A stretch of 63,273 nt of DNA, counting the filler, from Reticulomyxa filosa (lineage: Eukaryota; Protista; Foraminifera): NCBI GenBank assembly GCA_000512085.1. It is 16 parts of 16 records of this genome, joined end to end, with 100 filler letters (N's around TTAATTAATTAA, not from the genome) between each part and the next. Parts side by side here need not be neighbours in the genome. Positions count along the whole stretch, not along the records: positions 38,046 to 41,771 come from ASPP01003209.1; 15 more parts are not named here. One strand, given 5' to 3'. Position numbers and translations under genes: made by a program. The notes below the pieces were generated by a model. That model was not told where the DNA came from and did not search any database. It saw only the letters and a program-made list of their open reading frames with translations. Numbering within the stretch: the first letter of the stretch is position 1; each line of letters starts with the position of its first letter. Below, one piece after another: positions 38,046 to 41,889 of the stretch.

Positions 38046-38541
38046 TGGATATACTATTTGTTCTGGATCATATGATCAAACTATTCGAACATGGGATATT
38101 GAAACAACAAAACCATTGAATATATTCAAAGGGCATCAACACTGGATTAAAAGTGTAAAATATGGATCAGATAAATTATTGAATACAATATTATCTGGAT
38201 CAGTTGATACAAGTGTTCGTTTGTGGGATATTCGAACTGGTGAACAAATTCAAGTATTCAATGGACATACAAGTGTTGTATGTTCTGTTTTATATACACC
38301 ATTTTTTATAAGTGATGATATTAGTGTTGTTAATTATGATTCCAATGTTATATGCTCTGGATCATTGGATAATACAATTCGTTTTTGGGATATTCGATCA
38401 AATAAAAATGAATTGTTTATAATTCATGAGCATAAAAAAGAAAATTATAATGGAATTTTAACGATGAAAATAATTAAAAGAAAAAATAATATTCATTTAT
38501 GTTATGGCTCAATGAATAGTCATATTTATGTTTTAGGTTAA
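38046..38541 (+). CDS. WD40 family member, 3' fragment (same family as 1984-3683)
   Basis: [48 protein letters not shown]. Confidence 0.85.
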
Positions 38542-38639: not shown

Positions 38640-39765
38640 CTGGTAATGTCTCAACCAGTGCGATTGGTCAAGGAAGTGCCAATTCAAACACTGAACAAGG
38701 CAATGAGCAACAGCAAGCAAAAACCGGTAAACCGTTGTACAATGAGTTAAAAAGACAACAAAGTGCAACCAAGTTTCAAGATCCAATCACTTCTTCCATT
38801 GCAAGTCAAGATGAGGTTATTTATGTCGTATTAATACACATATATTTATTTATAATTTTTTTTTTTTTTTAAATCCTTTGGATATATTATGTGCATATAT
38901 AAATAGAGGTATTTTGAACCGATTCGTGTACAATACTTCCGAGACGTGCCGATAGCTGACCTGGAGACAGTATTTCCTTGCAAACGATTGTCTTTGAAAA
39001 CAATCGACCGCATTTACTTTATCATGGTTGTCGTTCTCGGCATGTACTATCTCATTAAAGAGATGTTCACCAAACATACAGGCACACTATGGCATCATGC
39101 TATTCTTGTTGGCTGTGCCGCTCTGGTCTTTCGTGCTGTCGCATGGTACCGAGTTTTGTTTGATTTTTATTATTATTATATTTGTTAAAAAAAATTTGCT
39201 TTGTTAGACACAAGAGACACTCTATAATGCGGTGTTGAACGAGACGCTGTTTGATTCTAACATTGCCTGTGATTTATCTGCCTTGTTGAATCTTATCGAT
39301 TCATGTAACACTCAAGACCTCTTAGAAACAGTCATTGCGTATTTTGCTTTGCTTCAGGATGTTACGTAGATCTTTGCATGTGTGCAACTATTATTTTTTC
39401 AGAGCTTGGAGAAGAATGAAATCATACGTACACAATTATATACACAGAAAGAAAAAGGCGCGTTGGCAACGCCTGAGGAAGTTGATAAATACTGTGAAAA
39501 AATGCTGAAGGATAAATTTGGTGCCAAAATCGATATTGAAATCAATGACTCGATGAAGAAATTAAAAGCGTTGGGATTGGTGGAAGAAAAACTCGATATT
39601 AGCAACGACAGTCAACCCTCTTTAATTGTAAAGCCTTTGAGAGAAGGTATCGATTGTGTTCATCGTCACTGGATGAGCTTCACCTCCTCCTTTCAACAAT
39701 TGCAGAGGATTGCGGCCACTGACACAAACCAAATCCTTGAAGAAAAGAAGAGTAATATTCCTTAG
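38640..39765 (+). CDS. TMEM143/DUF3754-like protein, C-terminal half, spliced
   Basis: YFRDVPIADLETVFP, two TM segments, LLNLIDSCNTQDLLETVIAYFALL, VDKYCEKMLKDKFGAKIDIEINDSMKKLKALGLV. No N-terminal half visible. Confidence 0.75.
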
Positions 39766-39938: not shown

Positions 39939-39977
39939 TCAATTTTTGTTTTACTTTCTGGGCCGAGACAAAAAGTA
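39939..39977 (+). repeat. ~40-bp element repeated at 40847-40887 (candidate promoter element)
   Basis: TCAATTTTT(T)GTTTTACTTTCTGGGCCGA(G/T)ACAAAAA(A)GTA occurs at both sites in the same orientation. The promoter role is inference. Confidence 0.85.
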
Positions 39978-39990
39978 ATAATAAGATCAA

Positions 39991-40145
39991 ACATCTTCGC
40001 TTTTGTTCGCTGGCTCGACCCTTGTCGTAATTGCGCCCTCTACATACAGCCGGATATAATCCGCACACATCGTATAAGTCGGAGTGCTCATGTATGAAAC
40101 ATTCTACCTTTGAAAGCTTGTTACTCAAGGACAGCAAAAAGATGC
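39991..40145 (+). ncRNA. Candidate structured small RNA, antisense to the 5' end of the 41255 gene
   Basis: GC-richer island closed by CATCTT/AAGATG, with nested CCTTG/CAAGG and CATACA/TGTATG stems and a T-run after it. 40052-40081 is 28/30 reverse-complementary to 41270-41299. Confidence 0.3.
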
Positions 40146-40250
40146 TTTATTTTTTTATTTCATTGCTTTGCTATTGATAACAATCAATTAAAAGTTTGGC
40201 AAGTTAATAATAATAAAAAATTTTCGAAAATAATAACAATAAGTTTTCAC

Positions 40251-40371
40251 GCGGAATGGGCGAGATTTGAACTCACAACCAGATAGCCGTATGGCTTGTC
40301 GGTTCATCTAACAACAAATCGCAAGAACCACCACCACACGACTAAATGCTCTGTTTGAGCTACCAAACCGC
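40251..40371 (-). ncRNA. tRNA-like RNA gene with the anticodon arm replaced by a long hairpin (not a canonical tRNA)
   Basis: GCGGTTTGG-TA-GCTC AAACA GAGC-A-[~65-nt arm]-TGGTT-GTGAG TTCAAAT CTCGC-CCATTCCGC. D stem, T arm (box B) and closing stem are present; no anticodon loop. Confidence 0.7.
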
Positions 40372-41254
40372 TGAAATCTGAGCATATATATTATTTCACA
40401 TGTTTGGGATATCTTCATTTTCACAATCATAATAATAATTCTGTACAATTAAAAAAAATTCTTTTTTTAAGTCAAACAAATAAATTGATATCTTGTTTAA
40501 TGTTTAATTATGTTTTTCTTGTTCTTTTTCTTTTTTACCTTATTTACTTGGCAAATTACGAACCTCTGCCCACAGAAAAGGTTTTTTGTTTTGTGAAATG
40601 ATTAAAAAGTTTCCAAAAAAATTGAATGGAAAATAAAAATAATCATTCATACTTTTTTTATGTGAGATATACACTAACAGCACTATTCCAATATCAAACA
40701 CTGCAACTATTAATTGTTCTGGAAGTCACAATACGTCTGCACTTACTTCCACACAATCACCTAAATCGTAACTTTTATTACAATCACTAGGAGATCAACT
40801 AATTTTGCAATCACTTTAATACAAGTCTTCAATAGTTTACTCGTAGTCAATTTTTTGTTTTACTTTCTGGGCCGATACAAAAAAGTATATAATTATGATT
40901 TAGGTTTTACAGAACCAAAATAAAAAAACCGTATTCTTTGATGAACAAACATGATAGAAGAAACGAACGTTTACGTGATCTTTTGGGCTGAACAGTTAGA
41001 ACTTGACAAAAAAAAAATATTGCCTGTGTGAAAGAAGAGGCTTGAACAATGGTAACAAACCCCAAATGGAAGTCTGTAAACTGGCCTCAACAAACACATA
41101 CAATGCATGAATTATTGAATATCAAAATTTTACAAAAACATTATTTTCGTCATATTGTCGATCCAAACATTTGCAAGAATCTCCGCAATAGCTTCAAATT
41201 GAATTGAAACTGCTTACTAGTTCAGTCTATCTATCGACAATTTCGACATCATAC

Positions 41255-41680
41255 ATGAATAATCATTTGCGACTTATACGGTGTGTGCGGACTATATCCA
41301 CATCACTCATGCGTGCTCGACGCATCGACAAGTGTTTGTCGCCATCAATGAACGAATCATCTTAGTACTTACTCCCGATGTGCAAGATTGCAAATTAAAT
41401 GTCATTTACAACATCAACATTCGATCCACCATCTTTGCCATGGACAGAATGATGCCCGAGCCCATCTTGAGCGTGCATAAATCCCGGCATGAAATGGAGA
41501 CAGACAGCGTGGATGTGGACATGCAAATGGAAATGACGAGGAGAGACGCTTGAGAAGCGGATGGAGCTCGTTCCTTATTGTCAGTGAACGGGATAACAAT
41601 CACATTACCATATGGGCCATTTCCCCAACTGGAGGATTTGAACCAAAAAAAACATTTGTTTGTTTTGACTCCAAGTTAAA
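41255..41680 (+). pseudogene. N-terminus of a DDB1/RSE1(SF3B3)/CPSF1-type beta-propeller protein; two apparent frameshifts
   Basis: QVFVAINERIILVLTPDVQDCKLNVIYNINIRSTIFAM, then in another frame SFLIVSERDNNHITIWAISPTGGFEP, parallel the SF3B3 N-terminus as I recall it (EIVVSRGKILELLRPDPNTGKV...). Could be an intact gene with sequencing errors. Confidence 0.55.
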
Positions 41681-41889
41681 TTTATTATTATTATCATTTT
41701 ATTATCAAACAATGGAATAAATACGTATAGTAGCAATGCCAGCGCTAACGCAAATTTTGGCAACAATAATANNNNNNNNNNNNNNNNNNNNNNNNNNNNN
41801 NNNNNNNNNNNNNNNTTAATTAATTAANNNNNNNNNNNNNNNNNNNNNNNNNNNNNNNNNNNNNNNNNNNNCAATGAGTGTGCACAATC

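What the first reader, a model, noticed from the sequence alone, without database searches (positions are those of the whole stretch)
40251..40371. tRNA-like Pol III-type gene with the anticodon arm replaced by a long irregular hairpin
Seen (minus strand): U8-A9, D stem GCTC/GAGC with a shrunken loop (AAACA, no G18G19), variable region TGGTT, and a canonical T arm GTGAG-TTCAAAT-CTCGC. The closing stem GCGGTTTGG/CCATTCCGC spans 9 positions with two U:U pairs and can extend through TTTCA/TGAAA. In place of the anticodon arm is an unbroken 12-bp helix TAGTCGTGTGGT/GCCATACGGCTA (three G:U), then GGTTC/GAACC and an apical loop. T-runs follow ~20-35 nt downstream. Established: intron-containing pre-tRNAs keep U33, a purine at 37 and a bulged 3' splice site; none is present here. 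Inference: the retained pairing with G:U wobbles suggests a selected tRNA-mimic ncRNA (comparable in concept to tRNA-like SRP-associated, Y or vault RNAs) or a SINE head, rather than random decay.
Basis: partly seen in the sequence, partly recalled or inferred. Interest (0 to 1): 0.8.

Follow-up and report, generated by a model that had tools for sequence, protein, structure and literature searches.

The report
tRNA-like gene lacking an anticodon
A 122-base stretch of a foraminiferan (Reticulomyxa filosa-type) genome folds like a transfer RNA whose anticodon arm is replaced by a long hairpin, and a second, strongly diverged copy keeps the same fold, so it is most likely a small structured RNA gene derived from a tRNA and not a working tRNA; whether it is expressed could not be tested.

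Summary
There is a cloverleaf with a canonical T arm, a 4-bp D stem with a 5-nt loop lacking GG, and a 9-bp closing stem with two U:U. A 61-nt irregular hairpin stands where the anticodon arm should be (MFE -47.8 kcal/mol, z -4.2). ARAGORN, with or without introns, and Rfam do not recognise it. The piece is Reticulomyxa filosa-like. Contig ASPP01022928.1 carries a second copy, only 66% identical. That copy keeps the short D loop, the T loop, the long hairpin, an extended closing stem, a nearly identical 21-nt apical block and a downstream T-run. Eight of 31 consensus pairs changed on both sides and still pair; simulations give P of about 0.001-0.06 depending on the null. No splice register gives both copies a canonical anticodon loop. 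The element lies in a 0.5-0.9 kb segment that is absent from a third related contig and sits in opposite orientations in the other two. No further copy was found in 65 kb of sampled R. filosa contigs or in metagenomes. Best reading (about 0.5): a Pol III-type, tRNA-derived, non-decoding structured RNA gene. Main rival: a decaying or selfish tRNA-derived repeat.

The parts
40250..40371 (-). tRNA-like cloverleaf core (122 nt): closing stem, D-like arm, long hairpin, T arm
   Evidence: Sequence. The MFE fold equals the cloverleaf, z -4.15. Covariance model of the two copies scores 170 bits on the minus strand and 7.8 on the plus strand.
40363..40371 (-). 5' strand of the closing (acceptor-like) stem, GCGGTTTGG. 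Pairs with 40251-40259; two U:U mismatches.
   Evidence: In the second copy the same positions are Watson-Crick (U-A, U-A), and pair 6:67 is A-U instead of G-C.
40372..40376 (-). 5' extension of the closing stem (TTTCA), pairing with TGAAA at 40245-40249
   Evidence: MFE with flanks, -50.5 kcal/mol, z -4.58. The second copy also extends its closing stem to 12 bp with different letters. RNAalifold pairs 11:144 and 16:139 changed on both sides.
40348..40362 (-). U8-A9 plus D-like arm GCTC-AAACA-GAGC: partial A box (TAGCTCAA), 5-nt loop without G18G19
   Evidence: The second copy has TAACTCAATTAGAGC; 10 of 13 D-arm positions are identical.
40284..40344 (-). 61-nt irregular hairpin in place of the anticodon arm: 12-bp helix with three G:U, small internal loops, 5-bp helix, 19-nt apical loop
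   Evidence: The hairpin is kept in the second copy, with G-C/C-G and U.G/A-U exchanges.
40310..40330 (-). Apical block TGGTTCTTGCNATTTGTTGTT, 20 of 21 identical in both copies (upper helix 5' strand plus most of the apical loop)
   Evidence: apex 24/29 identical against 66% for the whole element.
40260..40276 (-). T arm GTGAG-TTCAAAT-CTCGC, a good B-box match
   Evidence: (17-nt local match to the T arm of the tmRNA model). The second copy has ATGGG-TTCAAAT-CCCTT, with an identical loop and pairs 49:65 and 52:62 exchanged.
40215..40230 (-). T-runs (TTTT at 40227-40230, TTTTTT at 40215-40220), candidate Pol III terminators 20-35 nt past the cloverleaf
   Evidence: The second copy has a T10 run 14 nt past its cloverleaf.
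40397..40450 (-). Upstream block (about -79 to -26), better conserved between the copies than the element itself; possible upstream promoter element (inference only)
   Evidence: columns 369-455: 84% identity against 66% in the element and 56% in the 25 nt next to it.
39993..40846 (.). Variable segment carrying the element. Absent from contig ASPP01040122.1 (L016). Present in the opposite orientation, about 25 nt further right, in ASPP01022928.1 (L001).
39939..39982 (+). Left copy of a 44-47-nt direct repeat flanking the variable segment (right copy 40847-40893)
40847..40893 (+). Right copy of the flanking direct repeat

Best explanation
This is a tRNA-derived, RNA polymerase III-type gene for a small structured RNA of about 125-150 nt that no longer decodes. 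It is one of at least two diverged paralogous copies in Reticulomyxa filosa.

Shown here:
- The minus strand folds into a four-way junction with a closing stem that runs beyond 7 bp, a minimal D-like hairpin, a canonical T arm, and a roughly 20-bp irregular hairpin where the anticodon arm should be.
- A second copy with a third of its letters changed keeps this fold.
- Neither copy offers a canonical anticodon loop.

Inferred:
- The T arm (B box) and the TAGCTCAA motif (partial A box) act as the internal Pol III promoter, perhaps helped by the conserved block at -79 to -26.
- Transcription starts a few bases upstream of the cloverleaf and stops at the T-runs 14-35 nt downstream, so the paired leader and trailer stay in the RNA.
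- The acceptor/T-arm module keeps the RNA recognisable to tRNA- or La-type binding proteins.
- The long hairpin, with its conserved U/G-rich apical loop, is the working part, as a protein-binding or base-pairing surface.
For: Fold and stability: (z -4.2 and -4.6), and for the second copy (z -2.9).

Second copy at L001:1038-1158 with the same architecture.

Consensus structure: 31 pairs, all paired in both copies. Eight changed on both sides and four on one side. Slid controls give 0-2 double changes.

Simulations:
- Neutral mutation at the observed divergence almost never keeps the fold. Shared MFE pairs are 14 exact and 36 within 2 columns, against null means of 1.5 and 5 (P 0.001-0.009).
- A stricter null that randomises only the columns that differ gives P 0.01-0.04.

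Promoter-like letters are kept: T loop 7/7, T arm 12/17, D arm 10/13, apex 24/29, against 66% overall.

T-runs lie downstream in both copies.

Strand: three G:U in the 12-bp helix, and -50.5 against -34.2 kcal/mol for the two strands.

Not a tRNA.

The element and its immediate flanks are more diverged than the non-coding DNA further upstream (66% and 55% against 80%; P 0.0017 and 4e-6). This fits heavy transcription-associated mutation with selection on the fold only.
Against: - There are only two copies, at related loci, so the covariation statistics are weak. RNAalifold on neutrally mutated pairs already yields 4-4.5 'compensated' pairs, P(>=8) = 0.02-0.06.
- Each copy carries mismatches in helices: the window has U:U at 3:70 and 4:69 and two mismatches at the hairpin base; L001 has A.C in the D stem and U.U in the T stem.
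- Paired positions are not significantly more variable than unpaired ones (43/70 against 37/52 identical, P 0.34).
- The L001 copy folds about as well on either strand.
- No further copies were found in 65 kb of the genome or in metagenomes.
- The A box is only partial, and the TATA-like run at -25 to -13 is ordinary for 33% G+C DNA.
- Compensatory-looking changes inside a hairpin can arise by template switching during replication, without selection on RNA (established knowledge, not tested here).
Confidence: 0.5

Rival explanations
1. A tRNA-derived repeat or pseudogene (a SINE-like or otherwise mobile or duplicated piece of DNA) with no cellular function. On this reading the cloverleaf and hairpin are inherited from the ancestor, and partly kept by gene conversion or template switching rather than by selection on an RNA.
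For: - Helix mismatches in both copies.
- The element lies in a segment that is absent from one related contig and inverted between the other two.
- The window has other window-specific insertions and a 30-nt inverted repeat nearby.
- The covariation statistics are only marginal under the RNAalifold null.
- The L001 hairpin is a near-perfect palindrome that folds equally well on both strands.
- Prior knowledge: most unrecognisable tRNA-like sequences in repeat-rich eukaryotic genomes are of this kind.
Against: - The fold is kept at 34% divergence far more often than under neutral mutation. Compensation also occurs in the closing stem, whose strands are 110 nt apart, which is hard to explain by local template switching.
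- The tRNA-like part is not at the 5' end of the inserted unit, and the ends of the two inserts are not alike.
- T4 to T10 runs follow at once, which SINE bodies avoid.
- No other copy was found in 65 kb by BLAST, T-arm scan or covariance model.
Confidence: 0.28
2. A working nuclear tRNA gene with a 44-50-nt intron. On this reading the long hairpin is the anticodon-intron helix of the precursor.
For: - Pre-tRNA introns do extend the anticodon stem (established knowledge).
- In the window copy the register TAGTC/GGCTA is followed by G-U-GUG-G...C, which resembles a tRNA-His loop.
- At relaxed thresholds ARAGORN calls Gly(ACC) with an intron in L001 and Asn(GTT) in the window.
Against: - At default thresholds ARAGORN with introns finds nothing in either copy. 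Rfam finds no tRNA even at E 10.
- Enumerating all registers gives no U33/R37 loop at all in L001. In the window it does so only with 3 nt at position 26 and a 7-nt variable loop.
- The relaxed calls disagree on amino acid and on intron position.
- There is no G18G19, no bulged splice site (the helix is 12 bp without a break), and two U:U in the acceptor stem.
Confidence: 0.08
3. A tRNA-like processing signal of the mascRNA or 't-element' kind. On this reading RNase P and RNase Z cut at the cloverleaf to make the 3' end of a non-coding transcript that comes from the conserved upstream 0.35-0.47 kb.
For: - The upstream part of the segment is non-coding yet better conserved than the element (80% against 66%).
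- The acceptor stem plus T arm, the minimal substrate of RNase P and RNase Z, are the tRNA features that are retained.
Against: - The closing stem is extended by 5-7 further pairs into the leader and trailer in both copies. That is unlike known RNase P substrates of this kind.
- T-runs follow directly downstream, as for a unit of its own.
- No transcript evidence of any kind.
Confidence: 0.07

Closest known systems
Vault RNAs (Pol III; Rfam RF00006)
   Same: The order of parts matches: 5' strand of a terminal stem, A-box-like TAGCTCA motif, variable central hairpin, B-box/T-arm-like hairpin, 3' strand of the terminal stem, T-run. Length is about 90-140 nt. The comparison with vault RNA anatomy rests on my own knowledge.
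   Different: No Rfam Vault match even at E 10. This element keeps a real D-like arm and a four-way junction. The major vault protein had not been found in rhizarian genomes as of 2013 (PMC3762200); that survey predates the R. filosa genome. No protein partner was tested.
Intron-containing nuclear pre-tRNAs
   Same: Cloverleaf with the anticodon stem prolonged by a long helix. Internal A and B boxes about 85 nt apart. Downstream T-run.
   Different: No canonical 7-nt anticodon loop shared by the copies. No bulge at the would-be splice sites. No G18G19. Not detected by ARAGORN or Rfam.
tRNA-derived SINE heads and BC1-type tRNA-derived small RNAs
   Same: Derived from a tRNA, retains the B box, and has lost decoding features. 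Lies in DNA that differs between related loci.
   Different: The tRNA-like part lies 350-475 nt inside the variable segment, not at its 5' end. Terminator T-runs follow at once. There is no A-rich or LINE-like tail, and no dispersed copies were found in 65 kb.
tRNA-like small RNAs such as mascRNA, and the tRNA-like module of bacterial Y RNA (YrlA)
   Same: The acceptor/T-arm mimic is kept while the anticodon region is remodelled, and the RNA does not decode. The comparison rests on my own knowledge.
   Different: mascRNA has a shortened, not a lengthened, anticodon arm and is cut out of a long Pol II transcript. In YrlA the RNA ends lie in the stem that replaces the anticodon arm, whereas here the ends lie in the acceptor-like stem. 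No Rfam match to either.

Membership tests
Nuclear tRNA gene (with or without intron) | Recognised by a tRNA finder at its normal threshold | tested here: not met
   ARAGORN default and with introns finds 0 genes in the piece and in L001. Only relaxed thresholds (ps85, ps70) give calls, and those disagree with each other.
Nuclear tRNA gene (with or without intron) | Match to the Rfam tRNA model RF00005 | tested here: not met
   No tRNA hit at E up to 10 in the piece or in L001. The only related hit is a 17-nt local match of the T arm to the tmRNA model (8.3 bits).
Nuclear tRNA gene (with or without intron) | 5-bp anticodon stem with a 7-nt loop, U33 and purine 37, at canonical spacing | tested here: not met
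   Enumeration of all registers and cut positions: none in L001; in the window only with 3 nt at position 26 and a 7-nt variable loop.
Nuclear tRNA gene (with or without intron) | G18G19 in the D loop to lock onto the T loop | tested here: not met
   The D loops are AAACA (window) and AATTA (L001).
Nuclear tRNA gene (with or without intron) | T arm: 5-bp stem with a TTCRANY loop | tested here: met
   GTGAG-TTCAAAT-CTCGC. L001 has ATGGG-TTCAAAT-CCCTT with one U.U.
Nuclear tRNA gene (with or without intron) | Bulged splice sites (bulge-helix-bulge or anticodon-intron pair) if an intron is present | tested here: not met
   The predicted fold has an unbroken 12-bp helix across both would-be splice sites. 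This is a prediction only.
tRNA-derived SINE | tRNA-related head at the 5' end of the inserted unit, followed by a body and an A-rich or simple-repeat tail, flanked by short target-site duplications | tested here: not met
   The variable segment starts 350-475 nt upstream of the tRNA-like part. The two inserts have unlike ends. The window's flanking repeat is 44-47 nt.
tRNA-derived SINE | Many dispersed copies | tested here: inconclusive
   Two copies at related loci. None in 65 kb of eight other R. filosa contigs by BLAST, T-arm scan or covariance model. None in metagenome contigs. The whole genome could not be searched.
Vault RNA | Match to Rfam RF00006 | tested here: not met
   No hit at E up to 10.
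Vault RNA | Major vault protein (and TEP1) present in the organism and bound to the RNA | not tested
   No query sequence for MVP was available from a tool. The 2013 survey found no MVP in rhizarian genomes (PMC3762200), before the R. filosa genome was published.
Pol III type 2 transcription unit | Internal A box and B box and a downstream run of four or more T | tested here: inconclusive
   The B box is good in both copies. The A box is partial (TAGCTCAA / TAACTCAA, no GTGG). T4/T6 and T10 runs are present downstream.
Y RNA | Match to the Rfam Y_RNA model | tested here: not met
   No hit at E up to 10. The Ro-binding helix was not examined separately.

The most novel reading that the evidence does not exclude
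Foraminifera express a so far undescribed class of Pol III RNAs built on a tRNA chassis. In these RNAs the anticodon arm has been replaced by a long effector hairpin with a conserved U/G-rich apical loop. The genes evolve fast under selection for the fold only, and they sit in small DNA segments that are gained, lost and inverted between paralogous loci.
Probability: 0.3. Interest if true: 0.75.

Novelty: new variant of a known kind. Interest (0 to 1): 0.5.

Why it matters
My literature searches found no description of such an RNA in foraminifera; reported RNA genes there amount to ordinary tRNA genes. A tRNA chassis reused for a non-decoding RNA would add a rhizarian example to a short list that includes vault RNA, BC1, mascRNA and the bacterial YrlA module. 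It would also give a handle on Pol III promoters in this group. The pair of copies further shows a gene-sized fold surviving 34% divergence while its surroundings changed less. That makes it a small natural test case for transcription-associated mutation against structural selection. If it turns out to be a decaying repeat, it is an ordinary feature of a repeat-rich genome.

Tried and rejected
- ARAGORN with introns and Rfam at E 10 on both copies gave no tRNA or any other family.
- tRNA-His(GUG) with an intron: tempting in the window copy, but rejected because the geometry is abnormal and L001 has no equivalent.
- tRNA-Sec (9-bp acceptor stem): rejected. The T stem is 5 bp (9+5, not 9+4), there is no 6-bp D stem, no UCA, and no separate variable arm (reading).
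- Intron-encoded C/D box RNA: a C-box-like AGATGA occurs in the window only and there is no D box. Rejected.
- Metagenome scan with the conserved 21-nt apical block: 14 hits, all one unrelated bacterial gene.
- Sampling of eight further R. filosa contigs (65 kb): no copy and no tRNA.
- Coding potential of the conserved upstream part: none.
- Target search for the apical loop among the fetched loci: self matches only.
- Terminal inverted repeats or short target duplications around the variable segment: none convincing.
- A miniature inverted-repeat element inserted at a TA in the anticodon loop: considered. The hairpin arms differ between the copies by paired changes, which does not fit a fixed transposon end.
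Splice registers were only enumerated inside a script from the stored files.

Full report
**What is there.**
- A 9-position closing stem, 40371-40363 with 40259-40251, with two U:U.
- TA at the place of U8-A9.
- A D-like arm GCTC-AAACA-GAGC (40360-40348) with no GG in the loop.
- A 61-nt hairpin (40344-40284) that starts with an unbroken 12-bp helix holding three G:U. It continues through small internal loops into GGTTC/GAACC and a 19-nt apical loop.
- A 7-nt linker ending in TGGTT.
- A canonical T arm GTGAG-TTCAAAT-CTCGC (40276-40260).

The minimum-energy fold of the 122 nt is exactly this cloverleaf: -47.8 kcal/mol, z -4.15, none of 200 shuffles as stable. With five more bases on each side the closing stem grows by TTTCA/TGAAA and the energy falls to -50.5 kcal/mol (z -4.58). 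The complementary strand reaches only -34.2 kcal/mol. TTTT and TTTTTT runs lie 20-35 nt downstream.

**Not a recognisable tRNA or other known family.** ARAGORN finds nothing in the piece, either in the tool's default mode or when I ran it with introns allowed. Only at 70% of its threshold does it call this place, as Asn(GTT) with a 26-nt intron at position 30, among 22 other calls that are plainly noise. Rfam at E up to 10 gives no tRNA, vault, Y or SRP hit. The only related line is a 17-nt local match of the T arm to the tmRNA model.

**Organism and a second copy.** The ORF at 39382-39765 is 96% identical to the Reticulomyxa filosa protein RFI_26410. Upstream lie a WD40 fragment and a DUF3754 exon, so this is nuclear DNA of R. 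filosa or a very close relative. The contig that encodes RFI_26410 is ASPP01022928.1 (L001). It is collinear with the piece at 93-97% identity, except for a stretch that matches in inverted orientation at only 78%. That stretch holds a second copy of the element at L001:1038-1158 on the plus strand.

**The second copy** has:
- a clean 7-bp acceptor-like stem (U.G, then six Watson-Crick pairs), which extends to 12 bp with its flanks;
- TA;
- ACTC-AATTA-GAGC;
- a 67-nt hairpin that begins with the 8-bp helix TGTACACG/CGTGTACA;
- the T arm ATGGG-TTCAAAT-CCCTT;
- a T10 run 14 nt downstream.

It folds at -35.7 kcal/mol (z -2.9), though about as well on the other strand. Rfam finds nothing in L001 either. 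ARAGORN calls it only at 85% threshold, as Gly(ACC) with a 48-nt intron at position 32. That agrees with the window call in neither amino acid nor intron site.

**How the two copies compare.** Over the element they are 66% identical (80/122).
- The T loop is identical.
- The D arm (10/13) and the apex (24/29, including a 21-nt block with one difference) are better kept.
- The 3' strands of the hairpin (6/12) and of the closing stem (3/7) are the most changed.
- The overall difference between paired and unpaired positions is not significant (43/70 against 37/52, P 0.34).

**Consensus structure.** RNAalifold on the MAFFT alignment recovers the cloverleaf with 31 pairs, all paired in both copies. 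Eight pairs changed on both sides and four on one side. The double changes lie in the extended closing stem, at acceptor pair 6:67 (G-C/A-U), at T-stem pair 52:62 (A-U/G-C), and in the hairpin (G-C/C-G, U.G/A-U and others). Sliding the 3' partners by 1-3 columns gives 0-2 double changes and 36-48% pairing.

**Simulated nulls.** The structure was derived from these same two sequences, so I simulated three nulls.
- RNAalifold on a copy and a neutrally mutated version of it (same number and spectrum of changes) already gives 4-4.5 'compensated' pairs on average. P(>=8) is 0.02-0.06.
- The two real copies share 14 MFE pairs exactly and 36 within two columns. The null means are 1.5 and 5, giving P 0.001-0.009.
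- When only the columns that really differ are randomised, P is 0.01-0.04.

My reading is that the fold is kept better than neutral drift allows, but with two sequences the evidence is suggestive and not conclusive.

**No shared anticodon.** In a script I enumerated every combination of 1-3 nt at position 26, a 4-7-nt variable loop, a 5-bp stem with at most one mismatch, and every cut position that leaves a 7-nt loop with U33 and a purine at 37.
- L001 has no solution.
- The window has solutions only for the stem TAGTC/GGCTA, with 3 nt at position 26 and a 7-nt variable loop. There the anticodon would be CAU, GAU, GUU or GUG, depending on where the cut is placed.

The His-like reading (G-U-GUG-G...C) therefore looks like a by-product of a GT-rich helix. 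Together with the missing G18G19, the unbroken helix across both would-be splice sites and the U:U pairs, this makes a working intron-containing tRNA unlikely.

**Transcription signals (inference).**
- The T arm is a good B box in both copies.
- TAGCTCAA / TAACTCAA is a partial A box about 85 nt upstream of it.
- T-runs follow in both copies.
- A block at about -79 to -26 is 84% identical between the copies, against 56% for the 25 nt next to the element. It could be an upstream promoter element.
- The TATA-like run at -25 to -13 is unremarkable in 33% G+C DNA.
- The sense strand is assigned from the T loop, the T-runs and, in the window copy, the G:U pairs.

**An unexpected pattern.** The element (66%) and its immediate flanks (55-56%) are more diverged than the 0.35-0.47 kb of DNA upstream of it in the same segment (80%; P 0.0017 for the element alone, 4e-6 with the flanks). 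That upstream DNA shows no coding signal. Possible causes are heavy transcription-associated mutation of an active Pol III unit, gene conversion from other family members, or template switching within the hairpin. None was tested.

**Genomic setting.** A third R. filosa contig, ASPP01040122.1 (L016, found through the protein cluster), matches both flanks but lacks the whole segment.
- In the window the segment is 39993-40846. It is bracketed by a 44-47-nt direct repeat (39939-39982 and 40847-40893).
- In L001 a 0.53-kb version sits about 25 nt further right, in the opposite orientation.
- The ends of the two inserts are not alike, and the parts downstream of the element do not align.
- The window has a further 365-bp stretch (41133-41497) that L001 lacks. 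A 30-nt inverted repeat links it to 40052-40081.

So the element lives in DNA that is being gained, lost, duplicated and inverted between paralogous or allelic loci. It is not a clean transposon and not a SINE in the usual sense, because the tRNA-like part lies 350-475 nt inside the unit and is followed at once by terminators. The draft state of the 2014 assembly may account for part of this picture.

**Search for more copies.**
- A scan of metagenome contigs with the 21-nt apical block gave 14 hits, all the same unrelated bacterial gene.
- I fetched eight further R. filosa contigs through WD40 paralogues (65 kb).
- BLAST with both segments, a T-arm scan, ARAGORN and a covariance model built from the two copies found nothing there. 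The training copies score 175 and 170 bits; the next best score is 14 bits.

This only bounds the family at fewer than roughly one copy per 20 kb. The R. filosa genome as a whole could not be searched with the tools at hand.

**Interpretation.**
- Best reading (about 0.5): a tRNA-derived Pol III-type gene for a non-decoding structured RNA. The acceptor/T-arm module and the promoter boxes are retained, and the long hairpin with its conserved apical loop is the functional part.
- Main rival (about 0.28): a tRNA-derived repeat or pseudogene whose fold persists through ancestry, gene conversion or template switching.
- A working intron-containing tRNA: about 0.08.
- A mascRNA-type processing signal for an upstream transcript: about 0.07.

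**Comparison with known kinds.** The order of parts (terminal stem, A-box motif, variable hairpin, B-box hairpin, terminal stem, T-run) most resembles vault RNA. However, Rfam's vault model does not match, and a 2013 survey found no major vault protein in rhizarian genomes (PMC3762200). Literature searches found no description of such an RNA in foraminifera.

Noticed in passing
window 39993-40846, with L001:685-1218 and L016:1280-1292: The 0.5-0.9 kb segment carrying the element is absent from one R. filosa contig. It is present in the plus orientation in a second contig and in the minus orientation in the window, at insertion points about 25 nt apart. The ends of the two inserts are not alike.
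   Followed up: partly
window 39939-39982 and 40847-40893: A 44-47-nt direct repeat (91% identical) brackets the variable segment in the window. The related contigs have a single copy of this sequence.
   Followed up: partly
window 41133-41497: A 365-bp, G+C-richer stretch present in the window but absent from L001 (junction at L001:1466). It shares a 30-nt inverted repeat (41270-41299 against 40052-40081, 93%) with the window-specific DNA just downstream of the tRNA-like element.
   Followed up: partly
window 40372-40850 against L001:685-1037: The non-coding DNA upstream of the element is better conserved between the two copies (80%, blocks up to 88%) than the element (66%) and its immediate flanks (55-56%). 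There is no coding signal in any frame.
   Followed up: partly
window 38116-38541, 38946-39188, 39382-39765 (+): Neighbouring genes: a WD40-repeat fragment of a family with hundreds of R. filosa members, a DUF3754 exon, and the C-terminal exon of the RFI_26410 / RFI_36693 protein.
   Followed up: partly
L016:371-528 against L001:1685-1839 and window 41717-41771: The third contig carries an inverted copy of the piece's right end directly upstream of its gene. The locus family is therefore rearranged in more than one place; either segmental duplication or draft-assembly artefacts could explain this.
   Followed up: no
L002-L015 (metagenome contigs): The conserved 21-nt apical block matches exactly one bacterial gene that was sampled 14 times in gut-type metagenomes. 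This is a chance match with no tRNA-like context.
   Followed up: yes
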